From: Asterias rubens
Lineage: Eukaryota
DNA length: 64,000 nt
Direction of reading: 5' to 3'
Assembly: GCF_902459465.1 (NCBI RefSeq)
Contig: NC_047082.1
Coordinates: 8,122,001-8,186,000, forward strand
Positions 6,775 through 42,890 of the stretch are shown piece by piece (position 1 is the stretch's first letter; the number at the start of each line of letters is the position of its first letter). The notes beneath the pieces are model-generated. The model was given only the letters and a program-made list of their open reading frames with translations. It had not been told where the DNA came from and did no database searches. A program made the translations under genes and the position numbers.

Positions 6775-6832
6775 TACAATCGCACAAAAATAGTTAATGG
6801 CCTGACGTTTCGACCCTAGTAGAGTCTTTCTA
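6775..6832 (-). mobile_element. Truncated hammerhead-family copy in ARFRP1 intron 1
   Basis: Plus GGCCTGACGTTTCGACCCTAGTAGAGTCTTTC, the reverse complement of the family consensus; cut off within the catalytic core. Confidence 0.55.
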
Positions 6833-6895: not shown

Positions 6896-9800
6896 ATGTT
6901 CAGCTTACTGTATGGATTGTGGCAGTACATGTTTAGAAGAGATGAATATTTTGTGCTGATCCTTGGACTTGACAATGCTGGAAAATCGGTAAGTTCAAGG
7001 ATTTGTGCAAAGTTGTGAACGGCAAAATTGTTTAAGTAATAAGAATCCAATGAAAGTCTTGAATTCATTCAAATAGAAATTGTTTACAAGCTAGGTCATG
7101 CATTTTGTTTCATCCTGTTCAAGGTCACTGGCATAGCGCCCTCGTGTGCTTCTAATTAGTCAGTCAGTTTATATCACCATTGTCTCAGTTTGTTTACCTT
7201 ATTAGTCCTATGTCAAATAAGTACGGACATCGGTAAAATTTACTTATTGGAATTTTATGCATGGTTACGGTGAGATATTAATCTAATGCCAACGTGGCTT
7301 TAGCAACTGTGTGCCAGTAAAATTACTTTCCGTACAAAATATGACTGATCATTGTTCCATTGTTTGATGTATGACTTACGAATAGTGTTTTGAAATTTCA
7401 CCTTGCAGACTTTCCTTGAAACAACACAGATGCAATTCAATAAAAACTACAGAGGCTTGCCACTGGATAAAGTCACAACTACAGTTGGTCTCAATAGTAA
7501 GTAGGCCTAACAGTCGTTTATTCATTTATTTGTTCACACATTTAACAGCACAATTAGCACTAATAATGGGATGAAGGGGAAACAAGAAGGAAGAATATAT
7601 AATTATTTGATATACCATTACCTCACCATGCAATGCTTCAAAACAAGAAGAAATTATCAGTTTTAGATGTGGGAGGATATCCCCAATGGGAAAACCCAAA
7701 CAATCAGGTAGGAGCTGACAACTCAGTCCACATGCAAGGCTCCGGTCTGAGGTGGGATTTGAACCTGGGTCCACAGAGGTGAAAGGCAGGGAAAGAAACC
7801 GATGAGCCAATAACTATGTGTTGACCCCTTGCACTACTCGCAGCTCAATCACAGTTACTTTGCCGTTCATCATTTTGTTAATGTACCGCTAGTCTACAAA
7901 CTGAGCTGTGTTGTTCAAATAAGAGGGTTGATTTTACCATTGTCAATTTGTAACACTTTGAGTTCATGACACATGCAGACAAACTGTTGGATTTTAATCG
8001 ATGCCCCAATGGCATTGAAAAGCCTTTAAGAATAGGGTAGACTAAAGACACGTAGAGTAAAAGTTTAGTTTTTGTTTTCTTAATAGTTGGGAAGATCGAC
8101 ACTGGTCGGATACGTTTGATGTTTTGGGATCTTGGAGGACAGGAAGAGCTACAAGCATTATGGGATAAGGTAAGAAGGATTCATTCACAGGAAGCCATTC
8201 TAGTAAGCAGCTCTTTTGATGCAACACTAGATTAATGCACACTATGATTATCACTATAGATGATAACGAAACATTTGCTTGCTGGAATGGCGCTGTACAT
8301 AATTTACATTCCAACATAATAGAGCGTGAGGCTTCCAGTTCTCCATCTTGCACCTTGGGCGCTATAAAATCTTGAGTCTTATATTATTCCTCTATTCCAC
8401 CGAGTCTGTCTGGTGGCGAGAAGGCAGTCCAAATGCAGGTGGTGTATTGTTTAATCGATTATACAAAAAAACCAGCAAATTACTTTGTAAGGTTTTGAAC
8501 CTTGCTTTTTGAAAGTATACATGTAGTCAGGTGAGGTTTGTAAATCTCTTTTGAATTGTGTTGGTTCTGAAAAGAACCAGTGGCTGACAACGTTTCGATC
8601 AGTATGCTCTGATTGTCTTCAAGAATAACAGATCAGAGCATTAAAACATTGAGTTGTCATTCACTGGTACTTTTCAGAACCAACACTACTCAAAAGAGAT
8701 TTACAAATGGTGTTACCACAAACCTCACTGAATCCTTACTTTATCAACTTTTTGTATCTGTGTACTCTAGCTGTACAAGTTTATATTTTAGAATGAAAAA
8801 CCATAATCTCACCCTTGATATTCCTCTTTTCCCAAAATTGTTTTCAGTATTACGCAGAATCTCATGGACTGATCTATGTTGTGGATTCATCGGATAAGGA
8901 GAGATTAACGGAGTCAAGACTAGCATTTGGTAAGTATATTAAACACTTATTGTTAACACTAAACACCACAGAGCCTGACTATGTTACTCTTGAAGGCCTT
9001 GAAGTAACCCATGATCCCCAGAGTAATTGCGTGGTGCCGTTTTCAATGTTTCAATACAAGTTAACATTTTCCTCGTAGAAGAGCTAAGTCTTTGTTTTTC
9101 TTTTATCTTTTACAGGAAATTATTCCCCTGAAGTTTAAATCTTTGCTTTTGTGATTTCCATATTGTGTGTATTTCAAATATTGTCTATGTATTTCTATGC
9201 TACAATGTGACTGATTGACATTTTACAATAACTGTGATATTTCCATTTGAATGTCTGCTATTTATGAAATATTTCGTTGCCATTTTTCTGTAGCCTTCTT
9301 TGCTTGGATCTATTGTTTTTTATTTGAAAATTGATAATTCTGCTTTGTTTTCTGTGCTTTATATTTTAATTTTTATGCAGTTGTATAACTGCAACTCTGT
9401 TGACTTGATAATGAAATCTACCCATATTGCCATATTTGATGATTGTATTGTCTTCTTATTTTGATTATAACATGACTGCCCAACTATGTTGACTTGATAA
9501 TCAAATCTAGCCATATTGCCATATTTGATGATTGTATTGTCTTCTTATTTTGATTATAACATGACTGTCTTTGCTTCCTAAGCATGATGAGATTTAAACT
9601 GAATTTCTTCTGTAATTTTTGCATATATTGAATGTACAATACTAATATGACTTGAGTATGATTTCTACCAATATTGCCATTCTTAGTTGCCATGTTTGTT
9701 GATTGAATTGTCTTTTAATTTTTATTATGACATGACTGTGTTTGCTCCACAAAATTGATGATATTTAACGTGAATTTCTTTTATCATTTTTCATATTGAA

Positions 9801-11507
9801 TATACATTACTGACATGAGATTTTTGTGATAACTTTTCTGTTTAAAAGTAATTTCTTTATTTTTCATGTATATTGATGATATTTTCTAACTTAAGTTGTA
9901 GGCTTATACCATTTTATCAGATCTTTTAATTGTTTATTCTTTATACCTTTTAAGTATAAGCTATAGGCCTAGTTGGGGATGTTGATTTCTGAAAGCAATC
10001 AAAAACAATGATTGTTTGTTTTCTAAGTACAGACTTTTTAAAATTTCAGTTTCATTGCATTTAAGGAGGTCTCGTAATTAGTCATAAGTATTTGTTGCCA
10101 CAACTTTATAAATGAGAAAATAAAACTATAACCGTTGCAAAATAGAACCAAAAGGACCTATGGTAAAAATGCAAACAATCAATATTAGCCTGACGTTTCG
10201 ACCTTAGCAGAGTCTTTCTCAAAGGCTAAATGGCAACACAACACAACACACATGAACAGGAGTCGTTGTATTACATTTTAGCCTTTTAAAAAGACTCTGC
10301 TTGGGTTGAAGTCTCAGGCTATTAACGATTTGTTTGCAAAATAGTTTATACTAATACTTTTGATTTGCTTTCTTCCAGACATGATGCTATCAAGTGAAGC
10401 TCTTGATGGTGTGCCTTTACTTGTTCTTGCCAATAAACAAGACTTACAGGTGAGCGTCTTATAAGACTTTTGGTTGAACAGAGAATAATTGTCAAGATCA
10501 GGACTTGAACCTGTGGCATATGGATTAAATTTATTACCAACCAAATTTCCATTTGTGCATATTGCTTGTTTCTGGTATTCAGCTGTTGTTTGCTTATCCT
10601 GAAGCTCAGGTGGAAATTTGGTTGGTAATTCGGTTTTTATCAAGGAAGAAATTTCATGCTAAGCAAATTTGTGTGCTTAGCAGCTCTATGAAAATGGGCT
10701 CTGGGCACTAATGTATTAAAGTGCATTCATATATCATTGTAAAATGCGCTATATAAAAAAACTTGTTACTACTATTATCAGATTCTTATGTTTGTTTGAA
10801 CAGGATGTGTTGAACATGTCTGAAATCAAGGCAGAATTTAATCAAAGTTCAAGAAGTATTGGAAAGAGAGATTGTCATATACAGCCAGTGTCTGCGCTCA
10901 CAGGGTGAGTTGGGTAGAAACGAATCAGGTTTCTTAAAAACTCAATTCCTGGTTCGTACTTCCTGCGAATGCGATGCAAGTTTGATGCCACAAATTCACA
11001 ACAAACAGTTCAGAAAATTTAGATGTGTATATGATTTAAGGCATTGCAGGGTGAGGTTTGCAGTTACACCATGCGTGTATCTACTTGCCAGGTACAGTTT
11101 GTTCTTTAGAGAGCTGTCTTTCTATATTCTACTACCGCGGAGTAGAGATGTGCTGAACACCTGCGAAACATTCACAGTGAAAACTGAGCTGTGACGCCAA
11201 AATTGTCATCGCATTCGCATGAAGTATGAACCTGAATTAATGCAGACACATTTTGTGAAAGGGAATCACAAACAAACTTAACTTGGAGTCTTCTTCTGGT
11301 TTTTAAATGCTTTTAATTTACTTTCAACTATGCTTGGTTTAACATCAAGATGAATAGAAGATGGGTAAAACAGAGTCTTCTTTAAGATAATTCTTAGAAT
11401 TATTTTGTATTTGCAGCCAAGGAGTAAACGAAGGTATTGATTGGCTAGTCGAATGCGTCCAACGAAACTCTTATCGGAGACCACCACATACCAAAGAAAT
11501 CAGCTGA
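6896..11507 (+). CDS. ARFRP1: ADP-ribosylation factor-related protein 1, 202 aa, complete
   Basis: Coding exons 6896-6988, 7409-7496, 8087-8169, 8848-8929, 10379-10449, 10804-10904, 11417-11507, all GT-AG and in phase. Motifs MFSLLYGLWQYMFRRDEY, GLDNAGKS, TTTVGLNIG, WDLGGQEELQALW, LANKQD, SALTG and C-terminal RRPPHTKEIS*. Confidence 0.98.
7630..7812 (-). mobile_element. tRNA-headed SINE in ARFRP1 intron; similar heads at about 1315-1400 (-), 15730-15800 and 20730-20775
   Basis: Minus strand TGGCTCATCGG..CCCAGGTTCAAATCCCACCTCAG (A/B boxes) continuing into non-tRNA body. Confidence 0.6.
8525..8735. mobile_element. Inverted pair of Penelope-like terminal-repeat fragments with a central hammerhead-like motif (second family)
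   Basis: GTTGGTTCTGAAAAGAACCAGTG at about 8560-8582 faces CACTGGTACTTTTCAGAACCAAC at about 8661-8683. Minus strand TTGAAGA-C-AATCAGAGCATACTGATC-GAAACGT at 8590-8622. Related copies at about 615-680, 32105-32205 and 41305-41420. Confidence 0.6.
9398..9570. repeat. Tandem duplication of about 90 bp in ARFRP1 intron 5, with a degenerate third copy at about 9660-9740
   Basis: GTTGACTTGATAATNAAATCTANCCATATTGCCATATTTGATGATTGTATTGTCTTCTTATTTTGATTATAACATGACTG occurs twice. Confidence 0.9.
10185..10229 (-). ncRNA. Minimal type I hammerhead ribozyme motif (U3-A8 variant), Penelope-like/retrozyme-type
   Basis: Minus strand TTAGCCT-TTGAGAA-A-GAC TCTGCTAAG GTC-GAAA-CG-TC-AGGCTAA: 7-bp stem I, core UUGAGAA, stem II, GAAA, self-complementary ACGU in place of stem III, GUC cleavage triplet. 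Confidence 0.7.
10951..11232. mobile_element. MITE in the last ARFRP1 intron
   Basis: TIRs GGTTCGTACTTCCTGCGAATGCGATG / CATCGCATTCGCATGAAGTATGAACC. Confidence 0.75.
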
Positions 11508-29427: not shown

Positions 29428-31633
29428 GCCCGTTGAATGGGCTGACTGGACGAGTGTGCATACCGATAGCAGTGTTTACAAACACGTGGGAAGAGATCTC
29501 TGTTTGGTGGGACCGCTTCTATTTTAGGATGGTATCAACTTTGTACGTGATTGTGTGTGTGTGTGTGGATGAGTGCACCATGTTGTATGTACTGTGTTCT
29601 GGAAGCTGTCATGGCCAGAGCTACAGAGCAAGAACCTTTGACCATGAAGGTAGAAAATAAATTATCTCCACGCTTGGATGCCAAAAACTTAATAGCACCA
29701 AAATGAAAAACAACAAACAAACATAAAACAAAATAGACTTGCCTAATCTGGAATGTCATAACGTGCAATCGGTGCCAATAATAGCGTTATCATAACTGAT
29801 AATCTTTGAAGTGTATACAGAAGACGGATTTTTCAGACGCACAACACAAAATGTGCCAATACTTCGAAAAATGTGGCACTGTAGAAAATTGAATACAGTG
29901 AACATCCCAAGTAAAATGCAATAAAATGCATCTGTACAAAAATGTAGATACGCTAGTTGATAAGTAAGTATTGTGACAATTGGGTAGAAAATGGCTGCCT
30001 CTCCGTTTTTTCTAGTTCACCCACGATTTTATGTCCTCTCCCGATCGTGAGGATTCTAAACTTCGTTTTTGGATTTGGAGTCAAAAGGTTTGATTGTTTT
30101 TCTCGTTAACTGACTAAACAGATTACATCAAAGTACGCTCTGCATGTGACGCAGCACATCCAGACCCGATGCACCTGTTAACATCTTTGCAGGAGAGAAA
30201 ATTGAAAAAGACAAATTTTGTCTTGACCTTCGAACATCTAATAATAGGCAAAAAAGCGGTTTTTCTGTTTTTATTTTGCATGTGAGTTTTGTCCGTGTTT
30301 TTAATGGCTCTATGTACGTTCTCTTCCTTTGGATATAGTTAATGTGTTGTCATTTAGCCATCGAGAAAGTCTCTGTTAGTGTTAATCGCCACTTGGATTA
30401 CATATGCGGCCAAGAACAAAGTGGACCCTATAATTTATTTGGTCCAAGGATGAGGACCATGGTTGGATTTGCTCCATTCCTTCCTCCATGGTAGGACCAC
30501 AGAGAAAGGTAGAGAAAGGTCCTTTCTGGTTGGACGCACGTTTATAGCACTGTTCACCCCACCGACATCAAAGCTCAATCGATCCCTTACGAAAGGTTTT
30601 ATAAATGCCGGAGATGCACCTGCGTTGAATTCAGAAACACTCATTGAAAAAAAAAAACAGGGAAAAACGACACCTCATTGTGTCCAGAAATTAGGAAACT
30701 TTCGCAGAAATGTGTTGACTAGGGGGATCAGCGGCGATGACTAACATAATAATTTCCATTGTTCAGAAAAAAAAAAGAGGAACTTAAAAAAAGGAGAGAG
30801 AATAGCTTTTTAAAGTTTCGGCACTAGCCCAGCTGCGACCGTGACCGTGCCAATATTTCTGTATGGACATGTTTACCATAAGCCGTTTGTTGACACTTTA
30901 TGATCTTGGTGTGTTGTGTGCGGTTGTTGGTGGCATTGTTGATTTTTAGAAGTGGAATACCCGTATCATTTTACGTTCGTACAAGTGTGCAGGTGTGCTG
31001 CGCTATTGTTCCCAAATTGATCAGACTGAGGGAAACCGACGACTGTTTTATGTGCCACTTCAAGATCCCTCGGGTTAAAAAAAGAGTAAAATGTTTGTTT
31101 GAACCTGAAACAGACAAACAGAACAGAGAGGCATACTTACGTCACACACCCGCATACCATGGAGGAAACCTCCATGCACACACTTAAAACATTTACCAAT
31201 GAGCTTAAACATTTAATACCATACTTAAGAATACGATCAGGGCAAAATATTTGTTTACCACTAGATATTAAATATGTATCAACTCATAATTGAATCGCAA
31301 CCTGAAGCATTTTGCTAAAGCAAACCAAATTATACTTATGCATGCAATAGCAATCGAGAAGTCCGAAATGCCCATGCGCAAAAGAATTAGCAAGCCCAGC
31401 GGCCAGAAACGTACAAAGACCGATCATAAATGTGAGAAACTGGTATTTCACTGTCTGCTTTGATGTTCCCGACTCAACCGGGTTATCTTCGATCAAACAT
31501 GTAAAATAAATACGACTAAATATTATTTGGAATTCAGTTAGCAAAGTATGGAATGGATAGAGGCACTAGTTGAAACATATCACTTGATGATACCACTGCT
31601 GGCCTGAGCTCACGGAGGCCTCCATGTTCCCAT

Positions 31634-31873: not shown

Positions 31874-32375
31874 TGCCTCCCCGCCCTTGAAGTGCTCCGG
31901 TAAAAGTTTACAATTTACTCATAGGGTGCCCCTTCCAAGGAGAAAATGTCTTGGTGCCCTTGCCCTTTCCAAAAAGAAGCAAACATACCTGAACTACGCC
32001 GAGAGAGGAGTTTAACCGCCAAAAGACTGGAAACTCATCGGGAGGACATAATTTGTAAGAAACGGCTCGTAGAATATGTTGAAAATCAACCCTTTTTTTA
32101 ACAGCAACTAAAGTGCTCGAAACGTCGAGTTAAACCAACGGTTCTTTTCAGAACCACCCCAACTCATAGTCATTACATGGTGTTACCGCAAACTCTTCTA
32201 TAACTAAAGTGCTAAAAAAAAATTTTTTTTTAATACATTTCCCGCAGGCCTTACGACACTAGAAGTTTCCCATGAGCGATTTGCTTTAATTTATGGGTAT
32301 GTCTGGACAGAAAACACAGACGTCTTTTATAAAAAAAGACAAAAATAAAGCAGAAAAATGTTAATGACTAAATTA

Positions 32376-32420
32376 GCCTTCGATGAAGACTCTTCTAGGG
32401 CCGGGGTCGAAACGTCAGGC
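32376..32420 (+). mobile_element. Hammerhead-like motif, same family as 10185
   Basis: GCCT-TCGATGA-A-GACTC..GGGTC-GAAACGTC-AGGC. The downstream flank resembles those of the 42.8 kb and 10.1 kb copies. Confidence 0.6.
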
Positions 32421-34723
32421 CACTAACGACTTGTTTGTTTGTTTGGTAAACAGTTTGCAACAGCCAATTCTGTTTCTCAAAAAAAAAAAAAAAAAAGGAT
32501 GTGCAATATTCACCTGTTTGGTAAATTTATTTTGAATATTCAAATTGATATTTGCATGTGAGGATTTTCATTTTACATGCACTAGTAAGTTCCCATGTAC
32601 AGAGTTGCTGGTATGGTGGTCGCAACCCAACCAGCCTGACAATAGAGCAGTGTTGATAGCGATGTTATTACACGCTATATACAATCACTTGACAAGTTCC
32701 CAATGGCGGTCAAGGACCCTAAAATTGAATACGTTTGGTTTGAACACCTGGCTGCGAACGTGATCAACAGAGTATTTCCTCTACCTCTGTTGAGGACGTT
32801 CGCGTCAAGCATTGCGGAAATGTCATTCTTTTGTAGATGATGATGAATGCATTAGGAATGATAGGTGTATTAAAGGCCCTACACATATTTGGTATAATTG
32901 TCAAAGACCAGTAGTCTCACTTGGGGTATCTCAACCTATGCATAAAATAACAAACCTGTGAACATTTTGGACTCATTTGGTCATCGAAGTTGCAAGAGAA
33001 TAACTAAATAAAAAAAAACACGCTTGCGGTACAAATTATGTGTGTGCTTCCAGATGCCTTATATTACAAAAAAGCTTCAAGCCTGAAGTCTTTTATTTTA
33101 AGTTAGGTATTGCACCTTTCTCAAAAAAAAAACCCTACGTTACTTAATGAGACTGAGCCGTTTCTCTGTTTTATACTACCAACATCTCTCCATTACTCTG
33201 CAATACTCGTAACTTATACAATCAGTTTTAGTAATTACCGGTGTCAATTGCCTTGTACGATGTACCAAATTGCTGACCAACCAAAAGGACATGCTATAAA
33301 CAAAATAAGAGGGTAAATGTCCTGACGATGACCTTCGACCCGTAGTCTTTTTCGAAGAGCGATTTTATTTTCTATAAACAACCATCAGAGATAGAGATCA
33401 TACTTTGAGTTGCAGGAAAGAAGTCAGACACTACGTTTATGGCAGGAGTTATGTTCCATCTCAATGGTGTATTTTTGTTCGCAGCCGACACATGGCAAAG
33501 TTCAGTCAGATATGAAGTGCATTCACCGCATTTAAACTAAAACAAAACGAGAACGAAAAGAAATACTCATCTCGTTCGTCGCTAAAACACCATGTTCTTG
33601 TTTTGTCCAATTTGTTTGCAAGAAGTCGGCAAACACTGTTATTTAGCCTTATTGCTAAGAGTTCAAGAGTGTTCGTTTTGTAGTGAAATTGAGGTTGTTT
33701 GTTTAAAAAGGGGAACACATAACACTCATTTTAGAGGGAACAACTATAAAATCATCGAGTGTCATTGTTGAAAAACAACACCTGCACTGCAAGTGATTGT
33801 TAGATATTTAGTATTTAAAGTATCTATTGTTTGATTCATCTGTTCAGGAACACTAAACAAAACTGCAAAAAACTCAATCAATCATTCACCATCTTATAAT
33901 AGAGGCCAAGGTCACTGGGATTGAATGTATCGATGGACTATACATGTAGAGAGGTGGCAATGTGTGACAACAGCTTTGCACCCCAAACGGCAGCTGTCAG
34001 TTATGTATACCAAATTGTTTATTCTTATACACTTTTGATTTTTTTTTTTTTTTTTTTGGGGGGGGGGGGTGGGATGGAAGAAAAATGACGTTGCAATAAA
34101 CACTCTCCCCGGATGTAGAAATCATCAAGTCTAATTGGAATATAATTGACACAGGCGTTCATATTGACGGAAACACACTACATAGACCAGTTTTACGCCA
34201 CGATGAAAACTAGACATTCCTTCATAAACTTTCATCACCTGCAAATAATAATGGCATGTCGTTCTAGCGTTAACAGTTGAATACTTACGTTGTCCTTACT
34301 GCGAGATAGATTTATAACTCCACACTGACTGTTAACATAAAACTCTACTTATTTCGGTTTGGTTATTTATCTCCAACAGTCAGCATGATGCTGGGTGAAA
34401 TTTTAACGATCTCAAAATGACAACCACAGTGAAACTTTGGAATAATAATTATAAAAAAAGCCTCTTAGCGTATAAAGAGAACAATTAAATATACAATGAG
34501 AGAAAGATACAAGGTACAAATAAGCATATTACAAAAAACAGCTTTATTAAATAAATAAGTTTTAAACAGAGACTTAAAACATTGTAAAGAATCAACTCAG
34601 TTTCAAAATAGCTCTTAACTATTTACGTTAATATGAGAAATTATTTCCGCAGAAACTTTACCACTGCATAATATCAAAGATATCAACCATTATTTACTCC
34701 ATCCTACCTACCACAACATTGTT

Positions 34724-42100: not shown

Positions 42101-42746
42101 ATGCTTGTATACCCGCAAGTTTACTATTATGTATAGTTTATTAATAAACTGTAGGAAGGGTTGTTAGAATATTACACAGTTGTTGTTTCCGATCTGACAT
42201 GTGGAAGTTTGCATGGACACAAGAAACAAACTGTATTGTCTCTCCATAATAATGGGCTTTCTGTTCAGAGCACTTACCAGACTTTGAAAACCAACAACGG
42301 TCTCCGGTCCTTACAGAATCATAGAGAAAGGACCACATTTCTCTATCACAGAATTCACCCTCTTCTCAATCAGCTGGACTCAAAAGTTGATAATACAACA
42401 AGGGTGTAATTGTGAGTTTCTGGTCACCGGGGGGCACGTTGACGCCACAAGACTCCTTCAGAGAGAAAAGAAACCCATCAGAGGTGAAAGAAAACAGGAG
42501 AATTGGACAACGCAGCGAAGGGAGTGCAGTGACAAGTGAGATGGTGAAAGACAAGAACCCCGGAGCGACATGTTTGAAGAGACTGACTGCACGGTACCCA
42601 ACCACGAAGACGTTTTCTTAATTGTTATATATTTTATTATTCGCTGTGGTCTATTCATTTGAATCATAAAACAACCGAAAAGGCTGACACTACTCAAATT
42701 GACAAAACGAGTCAATGAAAACATAATATGCATACATCTAATTTTT

Positions 42747-42890
42747 TAGCCTTCGAGAAAGACTCTGCTAGGTCGAAACGTCAGACCTTTTTAAAACTAT
42801 TTTGTTTGCATTATACCATCAAATGTCCTTGTGGTTGGTAGCAGTTTGCAGCAGGTAATTTTGTTTTCTCATTGAAAATATCTTAAGTAT
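42747..42890 (+). mobile_element. Hammerhead-like motif plus flank, Penelope-like fragment
   Basis: TAGCCT-TCGAGAA-A-GAC TCTGCTAG GTC-GAAACGTC-AGACC, followed by about 100 bp shared with other copies. Confidence 0.6.

What the first reader, a model, noticed from the sequence alone, without database searches (positions are those of the whole stretch)
10185..10229. Dispersed minimal hammerhead-ribozyme family; this copy has an intact U3-A8 variant core
Seen: the minus strand reads TTAGCCT-UUGAGAA-A-GAC(loop)GUC-GAAA-CG-UC^-AGGCTAA, with a perfect 7-bp stem I and only the self-complementary ACGU where stem III should be. Family copies lie at 6799-6832 (-), 10279-10321 (+, decayed, inverted against this one), 32376-32420 (+), about 33322-33358 (-, decayed) and 42747-42787 (+); most share part of a common flank of up to about 100 bp. 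Known: Penelope-like elements and metazoan retrozymes carry minimal type I hammerheads that cleave as dimers, and C3-G8 can covary to U3-A8. Inference: this is a non-autonomous ribozyme-bearing retroelement family that may make self-cleaving or circular RNAs. Caveat: other copies read U3-C4, so the family consensus may be off-canonical and this copy may have gained U4 by CpG decay.
Basis: partly seen in the sequence, partly recalled or inferred. Interest (0 to 1): 0.78.

Follow-up and report, generated by a model that had tools for sequence, protein, structure and literature searches.

The report
Penelope retrotransposon tail with minimal hammerhead
The motif is a worn-out copy of the small hammerhead ribozyme motif near the end of a Penelope-like jumping gene, a known association; the one unusual trait is that this genome's master copy carries a base change at a normally fixed ribozyme position.

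Summary
The minus strand at 10184-10229 reads as a minimal type I hammerhead (min-HHR): 7-bp stem I, core UUGAGAA, an extra A, stem II, GAAA, palindromic CG, GUC. It is the only descriptor match in the window, against none in 60 shuffles.

It belongs to a family of at least 1,498 copies in this 417.6-Mb genome. The family is not a non-autonomous retrozyme. The motif lies about 300 nt downstream of the stop codon of an RT + C-terminal GIY-YIG ORF and 81 nt before the element's 3' end. That ORF has open frames of up to 931 aa. This is a canonical endonuclease-bearing (EN+) Penelope-like element (PLE).

The window copies are dead, 5'-truncated insertions. The pair at 10114-10338 is a long arm joined to an inverted short arm, a known PLE insertion layout.

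Homologous elements in Apostichopus japonicus and three unnamed ENA assemblies carry the same motif. Its 3-8 pair reads C-G, U-A or A-U, and stem II shows compensatory changes, so the fold is under selection.

This genome's master core is UCGAGAA (U3, C4, A8). The U4 in the window copy came from CpG decay.

PLE hammerheads are already published (Cervera & de la Peña 2014). Earlier reports of this scan found PLE-type hammerheads elsewhere in this genome.

The parts
10184..10229 (-). Min-HHR motif (the finding): stem I 7 bp, core U3 U4 G5 A6 G7 A8 A9, extra A, stem II GAC(UC)/(AG)GUC, G12 A13 A14, A15.1-CG-U16.1, C17. Predicted cut between 10192 and 10191.
10114..10260 (-). Long arm of one old insertion: the PLE 3' UTR from about 30 nt upstream of the hammerhead to the element's 3' end (...TTTTATTTTCTC). 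78% identical to a young genomic copy used as the blastn query.
10277..10338 (+). Inverted short arm of the same insertion. Its hammerhead is decayed (TTTTAAAAAGAC...GGGTTGAAGTCTC), and it ends at the family's second, inner end point (...TTTGTTTGCA), about 22 nt after the cut site.
6786..6831 (-). 46-nt young fragment (98% identity). It starts inside the core (GAAAGAC...) and ends at the inner end point.
30343..30382 (+).
32373..32475 (+). Diverged copy (69% identity) with core UCGAUGA (U3-G8 wobble), a lengthened stem II and a full tail, followed by an A18 run. This core form is rare: 2 exact hits genome-wide.
33265..33358 (-). Strongly decayed copy (TCGAAAAAGACTACGGGTCGAAGG...GTCCTTTTGGTTGGTCAGCA). 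Recognisable by eye only.
42745..42878 (+). Old copy (80% identity) with the family core UCGAGAA, a 1-nt deletion in stem II and a full 3' tail.

Best explanation
The motif is the minimal type I hammerhead that sits in the 3' untranslated region of an autonomous, endonuclease-bearing (EN+) Penelope-like retrotransposon (RT plus C-terminal GIY-YIG). By analogy this region is the pseudo-LTR (pLTR).

Shown:
- The motif lies about 300 nt after the ORF stop codon and 81 nt before the element's 3' end.
- Copies are variably 5'-truncated, flanked by 10-15 bp target-site duplications, and often carry an inverted 5' stub that ends about 22 nt after the cut site.
- The window pair at 10114-10338 is one such long-arm/short-arm insertion. 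It sits in an intron of an Arf-family GTPase gene.
- The hammerhead fold is conserved by compensatory changes in homologous elements of other echinoderm or echinoderm-like assemblies.

Inferred:
- In the element's RNA, two copies pair through the ACGU palindrome, or the element's own protein assists, as reported for an Anolis PLE. The RNA then cuts after GUC and trims read-through or tandem transcripts.
- The inverted arms arise because both target strands prime reverse transcription from internal start sites downstream of the ribozyme.
- This genome's master core is U3-C4-G5-A6-G7-A8-A9. U4C is expected to weaken catalysis. The rest of the core stays fixed and the family is recently active, so I take the ribozyme to be attenuated but still used. 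I put this at about 55:45 against a non-catalytic relic.
- At this locus the copy is dead and has no function.
For: PLE identity:
- GIY-YIG (PF01541) hit in L055, and RVT_1 (PF00078) plus GIY-YIG in the 496-aa ORF of L070. The motif lies 303 nt downstream of that ORF's stop.
- 150 genomic matches to the ORF's C-terminus. Open frames reach 931 aa, and several are 100% identical over 212 aa.
- Retroelement hallmarks: 10-15 bp TSDs, variable 5' ends and inverted stubs.
- These features match the published PLE layout (PMC8557442; PMC4209133 reports opposite-strand pairs 100-700 bp apart).

Min-HHR features from PMC4209133 are all present: an extra nucleotide after A9, G10.1-C11.1, palindromic 15.2-16.2, and U3-A8.

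Selection on the fold (alignment A2):
- 3-8 pair: UA 6, AU 2, CG 2, always paired.
- 10.3-11.3: UA 4, AU 3, CG 3.
- 10.2-11.2: AU 7, CG 2.
- 15.2-16.2: CG 7, UA 2.
- 86% of cells are paired, against at most 42% when the partners are slid.
- The motif lies 226-564 nt after the ORF stop in every foreign locus.

Other points:
- C4 is the master state: 610 TCG, 114 TTG, 0 CTGANGA.
- A natural U4C hammerhead is reported to lose activity in vitro yet support viroid infectivity (PMC3088659).
- Protein-dependent cleavage, internal RT start sites and extension of both strands are reported for PAc (PMC11167929).
Against: - No cleavage data exist for this or any U3-C4-A8 core, and position 4 is normally invariant.
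- No Rfam hammerhead model matches at E <= 10. The genome-wide RF00163 search was blank, though its controls were also blank.
- Folding energies are no better than shuffles: z = -1.26 for the window copy and -0.47 for the master.
- In the master, C4-G5 can pair with C15.2-G16.2. That alternative fold scores -12.4 against -10.6 kcal/mol for the hammerhead secondary structure, and it would sequester core bases.
- The covariation rests on only about four lineages. Three of them are unnamed ENA assemblies, with 1-6 copies each.
- I could not fetch a full-length copy, so an upstream pLTR with a second hammerhead is assumed, not shown.
- Hammerhead cleavage was not needed for PAc insertion in vitro (PMC11167929).
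Confidence: 0.85

Rival explanations
1. The motif is a non-catalytic relic in this genome. The U4C change killed the ribozyme, and the conserved stretch persists because it serves as a protein-binding or RT-positioning structure in the 3' UTR, or simply because too little time has passed for it to decay.
For: - C4 is fixed in the master: 610 copies against 114 decayed TTG copies.
- A C-to-T change at this CpG would be an easy reversion, yet the master kept C4 in copies ranging from 69% to 100% identity.
- The master's lowest-energy fold pairs C4-G5 with C15.2-G16.2.
- PAc insertion in vitro does not need hammerhead cleavage (PMC11167929).
- Naiad PLEs thrive without canonical hammerheads (PMC8557442).
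Against: - All other core positions, the U3-A8 pair, G10.1-C11.1 and the CG palindrome are unchanged in the master. By eye, the adjacent 81-nt tail shows about 6 subfamily-diagnostic changes between old and young copies, against none in the 46-nt motif.
- A U4C hammerhead is reported to retain enough activity in vivo for viroid infectivity (PMC3088659).
Confidence: 0.4
2. One reading: a non-autonomous, ribozyme-bearing retroelement (retrozyme or SINE-like) that makes self-cleaving or circular RNAs and is mobilised in trans.
For: - Most copies are short (about 45-190 nt) and non-coding.
- Micro-arrays of the motif exist: L038 with a 44-nt period and 4.5 units, and L051 with a 51-nt period.
- A 2026 preprint argues that animal retrozymes derive from PLE pLTRs.
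Against: - The same sequence is continuous with the 3' UTR of the RT + GIY-YIG ORF.
- 5' ends are variable, not fixed as in a SINE.
- No arrays of 150-400 bp units were found in the loci examined.
- The two micro-arrays have units too short for a retrozyme.
Confidence: 0.07
3. A chance resemblance to a hammerhead inside an ordinary repeat.
For: - No Rfam hammerhead hit.
- Folding z-scores are not significant.
- The family consensus breaks the CUGANGA box at position 4.
Against: - 0 descriptor hits in 60 shuffles.
- The motif sits where PLE hammerheads are known to sit.
- All four non-descriptor hallmarks of PLE min-HHRs are present.
- The A. japonicus homologue has a fully canonical CUGAAGA core in the same register.
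- Compensatory changes occur at four pairs.
Confidence: 0.02

Closest known systems
Minimal hammerheads (min-HHR) of metazoan Penelope-like elements (Cervera & de la Peña 2014, PMC4209133)
   Same: - Type I topology with no helix III and a palindromic 15.2-16.2.
- An unpaired nucleotide between A9 and G10.1.
- G10.1-C11.1, a short helix I (4-5 bp) and a longer helix II.
- The U3-A8 covariant core, as in Cercyon of Schistosoma.
- Mostly single, dispersed motifs from truncated PLEs.
- Opposite-strand pairs about 100-700 bp apart.
   Different: - The master core here has C at position 4 (UCGAGAA), which is not part of their descriptors.
- The homologue in one ENA assembly has A3-U8, a pair I did not find reported as natural.
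- The host appears to be an echinoderm.
Poseidon PAc of Anolis carolinensis (Frangieh et al. 2024, PMC11167929)
   Same: - An EN+ PLE with a hammerhead upstream of the point where insertions end.
- Insertions end at internal RT start sites downstream of the ribozyme (the 'tail').
- Both target strands can be extended, which would explain the inverted arms.
   Different: - In PAc the hammerhead spans the ORF start codon. Here no ORF continues through the motif: the only frame stops in loop II.
- The PAc core is canonical C3-G8.
- Protein dependence and RT start sites are untested here.
Metazoan non-LTR retrozymes (Cervera & de la Peña 2020, PMC7229834; Li et al. 2026 preprint)
   Same: A type I hammerhead with a weak, palindromic helix III. 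A proposed evolutionary link to PLE pLTRs.
   Different: Retrozymes are tandem arrays of non-coding units that give circular RNAs. These copies are dispersed, truncated tails of a coding element, and no such arrays were seen.
Natural U4C hammerhead of a viroid (cited in Perreault et al. 2011, PMC3088659)
   Same: C at the normally invariant U4, in an element that is still biologically successful.
   Different: The viroid hammerhead has full tertiary contacts and a C3-G8 pair. Here C4 is combined with U3-A8 in a minimal, helix-III-less motif.

Membership tests
PLE minimal hammerhead (min-HHR) | Catalytic boxes CUGANGA (or the U3/A8 covariant) and GAAA | tested here: inconclusive
   The window copy fits: UUGAGAA and GAAA. 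The family master has UCGAGAA, so position 4 fails the box: 610 TCG, 114 TTG, 0 CTGANGA. The homologues in A. japonicus (CUGAAGA) and ERZ26222911 (UUGAGAA) meet it.
PLE minimal hammerhead (min-HHR) | One unpaired nucleotide between A9 and G10.1 | tested here: met
   An extra A is present in all 10 rows of alignment A2.
PLE minimal hammerhead (min-HHR) | G10.1-C11.1 closing pair of helix II | tested here: met
   GC in 10 of 10 rows.
PLE minimal hammerhead (min-HHR) | No helix III; A15.1/U16.1 flank a palindromic 15.2-16.2 | tested here: met
   ACGU in most rows and AUAU in the ERZ25070167 copies. 15.2-16.2 reads CG 7, UA 2.
PLE minimal hammerhead (min-HHR) | Located in the terminal repeat or UTR of a PLE | tested here: met
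   303 nt after the stop of the RT + GIY-YIG ORF in L070, and 226-564 nt after it in the foreign loci. A repeat of the motif upstream of the ORF (a true pLTR) was not tested, because no full-length copy could be fetched.
PLE minimal hammerhead (min-HHR) | Site-specific self-cleavage (as a dimer or with protein) | not testable with these tools
   Needs in vitro transcription or RNA-end mapping.
Rfam Hammerhead_1 (RF00163) and other Rfam hammerhead models | Covariance-model score at or above gathering (34 bits for RF00163) | tested here: not met
   No hammerhead family appears even at E <= 10 on 106-2,501 nt stretches or at gathering threshold on the window. The genome search was blank, but so were its controls. 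This is plausible for helix-III-less motifs, since PMC4209133 needed its own descriptor to find them.
Canonical EN+ Penelope-like element | Single ORF with RT followed by a C-terminal GIY-YIG endonuclease | tested here: met
   PF00078 at residues 11-161 and PF01541 at residues 399-482 of the L070 ORF. Open frames reach 931 aa.
Canonical EN+ Penelope-like element | 5'-truncated insertions, inverted 5' stub, variable TSD, tail extension | tested here: met
   TSDs of 10-15 bp in L016, L018, L027, L033, L044, L046 and L057. Inverted arms in L009, L017, L032, L033, L046 and L055.
Metazoan non-LTR retrozyme | Tandem arrays of non-coding units about 170-400 bp long, each with a type I hammerhead | tested here: not met
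   Copies are dispersed or form inverted pairs. The only arrays seen are micro-arrays with periods of 44 and 51 nt.

The most novel reading that the evidence does not exclude
The U3-C4...A8 core is a catalytically competent natural hammerhead variant that has not been described. On this reading the sea-star PLE lineage keeps it on purpose. For example, C4-G5 pairing with the 15.2-16.2 CG might hold the monomer in an off state until two copies or the element's protein open it. Together with the A3-U8 form seen in a related assembly, this one PLE lineage would then show three Watson-Crick versions of the 3-8 pair plus a tolerated change at 'invariant' U4.
Probability: 0.2. Interest if true: 0.5.

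Novelty: new member of a known kind. Interest (0 to 1): 0.3.

Why it matters
Mostly it does not change anything. Hammerheads in Penelope-like elements have been known since 2014, and this window holds only dead copies.

Two small points may interest ribozyme and transposon specialists.

1. Orthologous hammerheads of one PLE lineage show C-G, U-A and A-U at the 3-8 core pair. This is clean natural evidence for that tertiary pair.

2. A family of more than 1,500 copies, with intact 931-aa frames, spread while carrying C at the normally invariant U4. That is a natural test of whether ribozyme catalysis matters for PLE transposition, a question the literature leaves open.

Tried and rejected
- **Rfam scans.** I ran gathering threshold on the window, and E <= 10 on 2.5 kb around the finding and on 106 nt of a young copy. 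No hammerhead family appeared. The only hits were weak miRNA-like matches that reflect the inverted arms.
- **Genome-wide RF00163 search.** Blank, but the tool's controls were also blank, so it says nothing.
- **Single-strand folding.** The hammerhead-like fold is the lowest-energy fold of the window copy, but z-scores of -1.26 to +0.33 are not significant.
- **Dimer folding.** The lowest-energy form is a domain-swapped duplex through the near-palindromic loop II, not a double hammerhead, so it gives no support either way.
- **A 'subfamily C' with core UCGAUGA (window 32373).** Only 2 exact hits genome-wide, so it is not a real subfamily.
- **Histone stem-loop lead from earlier notes of this scan.** This family has none. 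The stem-loop belongs to a second hammerhead family, which also has copies in the window.
- **Full-length copies.** The upstream pLTR and the ORF start therefore remain unseen.
- **One contig look-up (P0037).** It was not sent because of a queue and was not repeated.
- **TSD of the 10114-10338 insertion.** Only a doubtful A(C/G)TTTATA match, so it is not claimed.
- **Organism.** The closest named homologues are from the sea cucumber Apostichopus japonicus.
Full report
**What is at the site**

The minus strand of 10184-10229 reads as a minimal type I hammerhead:
- stem I: UUAGCCU/AGGCUAA, 7 bp
- core: U3 U4 G5 A6 G7 A8 A9, then one extra A
- stem II: GAC(UC)...(AG)GUC
- G12 A13 A14
- A15.1-C-G-U16.1 with no loop
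- C17

The predicted cut lies between 10192 and 10191.

A min-HHR descriptor of my own finds this as the only hit on both strands of the 64-kb window. It finds nothing in 60 dinucleotide-preserving shuffles. The window is eukaryotic. The motif lies in an intron, 41 nt upstream of a plus-strand exon encoding MMLSSEALDGVPLLVLANKQDLQ, an Arf-family GTPase segment.

**The family**

The decayed copy near 33265-33358(-) is visible only by eye.

Genome-wide, a 27-base anchor around an N8 core gives 1,498 hits at up to 2 mismatches, against 0 for the reversed control. A second pattern gave 1,293 against 0. The genome is 417.6 Mb in 150 contigs.

In 89 distinct copies from fetched loci the motif is nearly invariant. 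Upstream it continues into a shared leader (...ACCTGTTCATGTTTGTTGTGTTGTCAT). Downstream it continues for 81 nt to a fixed end (...AATTCTATTTTCTC).

**What the element is**

Copies start at variable points. They are flanked by 10-15 bp target-site duplications, for example in L016, L018, L027, L033, L044 and L057 and L046.

Many copies carry an inverted partial copy at their 5' side. That stub ends at a second fixed point, about 22 nt after the cut site (...CTATTTTTTGCA).

Longer copies extend upstream into an ORF. L055 holds a 214-aa frame with a GIY-YIG domain. L070 holds a 496-aa ORF with RVT_1 followed by GIY-YIG. In L070 the hammerhead core starts 303 nt after the stop codon.

A search of the genome with the last 224 residues finds 150 places. 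Open frames reach 931 aa, and several are 100% identical over 212 residues. A second family at 46% identity has frames of 921-930 aa.

This is the published layout of canonical EN+ Penelope-like elements:
- RT plus C-terminal GIY-YIG
- strong 5' truncation
- an adjacent inverted 5'-truncated copy
- a tail extension
- a hammerhead near the 3' end, inside the pseudo-LTR (PMC8557442; PMC4209133)

The window pair at 10114-10260(-) and 10277-10338(+) is one such insertion, with a long arm and an inverted short arm. The other window copies are truncated tails.

The family is therefore not a non-autonomous retrozyme. I saw no 150-400 bp tandem arrays. There were only two micro-arrays of the motif, with periods of 44 and 51 nt.

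**Comparison with the published min-HHR**

Cervera & de la Peña list features that emerged beyond their search descriptor:
- a conserved G10.1-C11.1 pair
- palindromic 15.2-16.2
- families full of compensatory changes

They also report the U3-A8 core covariation in Cercyon, motifs on opposite strands 100-700 bp apart, and mostly single motifs from truncated PLEs. All of these hold here.

Rfam's hammerhead models do not match. That is plausible for motifs without helix III. The genome-wide RF00163 search was uninformative because its controls were also blank.

**Is the fold selected?**

Within this genome the copies are too uniform to tell. I therefore searched for protein homologues of the ORF's C-terminus and fetched their contigs. 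In every usable locus a hammerhead in the same register lies 226-564 nt after the stop.

| Source | Loci | Core | Stem II | 15.2-16.2 | Triplet |
|---|---|---|---|---|---|
| Apostichopus japonicus | L086, L089 | CUGAAGA (canonical) | GAUCC/GGAUC | CG | GUC |
| ERZ26222911 | cores in L087, L090, L094 (two copies), L095(-); L095(+) lacks the 5' half | UUGAGAA | GAACC/GGUUC | CG | mostly GUA |
| ERZ25070167 | L085, L096 | AUGAUUA | GCUUC/GGAGC | UA | AUC |
| ERZ1764468 (94% protein identity) | L092 | UCGAGAA | as in this genome | CU (mutated) | UUC |

In ERZ26222911 the CpGs of GAAACG are intact in several copies, so U4 is the master state there.

On a 10-row alignment the pair counts are:
- 3-8 pair: UA 6, AU 2, CG 2, always paired
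- 10.3-11.3: UA 4, AU 3, CG 3
- 10.2-11.2: AU 7, CG 2
- 15.2-16.2: CG 7, UA 2

Overall, 86% of cells are paired, against at most 42% when the partners are slid.

This rests on about four lineages, three of them unnamed assemblies. It is good qualitative evidence, not a statistical proof.

**The odd position**

In this genome the master core is UCGAGAA: U3, C4, A8. With exact flanks I count 610 TCG, 114 TTG and 0 CTGANGA. The TTG copies more often carry other mutations, as expected if they arose by CpG decay.

Its 'intact' U4 and its perfect 7-bp stem I are accidents of decay in an old copy, 78% identical to the young copy used as the blastn query. The master has only 4 bp, a mismatch, then 1 bp.

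U4 is normally invariant. It contacts the A6-N7 phosphate. A natural U4C viroid hammerhead is reported to lose much activity in vitro yet stay infectious (PMC3088659).

In the master, C4-G5 can also pair with C15.2-G16.2. This gives a fold of -12.4 kcal/mol, against -10.6 for the plain hammerhead secondary structure.

**Mechanism**

Shown: the anatomy above.

Inferred from the literature:
- The motif would act on element transcripts as a dimer through the ACGU palindrome, or with help from the element's protein. PAc's hammerhead cleaved only with protein present (PMC11167929).
- The two fixed end points would be internal reverse-transcription start sites, used on the two target strands. This would produce the long-arm/short-arm inverted insertions.

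Whether the C4 core still cleaves is open. Everything else in the core is unchanged in a lineage that has kept transposing. By eye, the neighbouring tail shows about 6 subfamily-diagnostic changes, against none in the 46-nt motif. I therefore lean slightly, about 55:45, towards an attenuated but used ribozyme over a relic.

PAc insertion in vitro did not need cleavage. Naiad PLEs do well without canonical hammerheads. So dispensability is a serious rival.

**Relation to earlier notes of this scan**

Earlier reports on other pieces of this genome describe PLE-type minimal hammerheads followed by a histone-mRNA stem-loop. I checked this. The family studied here has no such stem-loop. Copies of that other family do occur in the window, near 8500-8640(-) and 32110-32170(+), and in L004 and L045.

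**Limits**

No full-length copy was examined, so the upstream pLTR is assumed.
The closest named homologues are from a sea cucumber.

**Verdict**

This is a real feature of a known kind and a new member of it. The interpretation as a retrozyme is not supported. The U4C master core and the three-way 3-8 covariation are the only points of note.

Noticed in passing
window about 8500-8640 (-) and about 32110-32170 (+); also L004 and L045: Copies of a second hammerhead-type repeat (..CTGATCGAAACGT..) followed at once by a histone-mRNA-like stem-loop (GGTTCTTTTCAGAACC). This is the family described in earlier notes of this scan, and it is distinct from the one studied here.
   Followed up: partly
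G000, many places: A second PLE family, 46% identical over the GIY-YIG region, with dozens of copies and open frames of 921-930 aa. Its 3' tail was not examined.
   Followed up: no
family tail, about 20-45 nt before the element's 3' end (e.g. L006, L048; window 42836-42856): A conserved hairpin, AGCUGUU-UGC-AACAGCU (7 bp; AGUUGUU in the youngest copies), just upstream of the fixed 3' end. It may correspond to the stem-loop in which PAc starts reverse transcription.
   Followed up: no
L038:1368-1570 and L051:1546-1656: Micro-arrays of the hammerhead unit alone: 44-nt period with 4.5 copies, and 51-nt period with 2.2 copies. These look like local amplifications, too short to be retrozyme units.
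   Followed up: partly
L085:2798-2843 and L096:2717-2762 (ENA assembly ERZ25070167): Two independent copies of the homologous hammerhead have A3-U8 (core AUGAUUA) and UA at 15.2-16.2. I did not find A3-U8 reported as a natural core pair in the papers I read.
   Followed up: partly
L086:3088-3220 (Apostichopus japonicus): Two hammerhead motifs lie tail-to-tail on opposite strands, about 40 nt apart. This is a different inverted arrangement from the head-to-head pairs in this genome.
   Followed up: no
window 10114-10338 and the exon at 10379-10449: The two inverted arms form an imperfect hairpin in the intron, ending 41 nt before an Arf-family GTPase exon. Rfam gives only weak miRNA-like matches here (MIR6140, 26.8 bits against a gathering score of 140).
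   Followed up: partly
master motif (L048:1496-1541, minus strand): Loop II plus its closing pairs (CUGCUAGG) is nearly palindromic. The predicted homodimer is therefore a domain-swapped duplex (-32.6 kcal/mol), not a double hammerhead.
   Followed up: no
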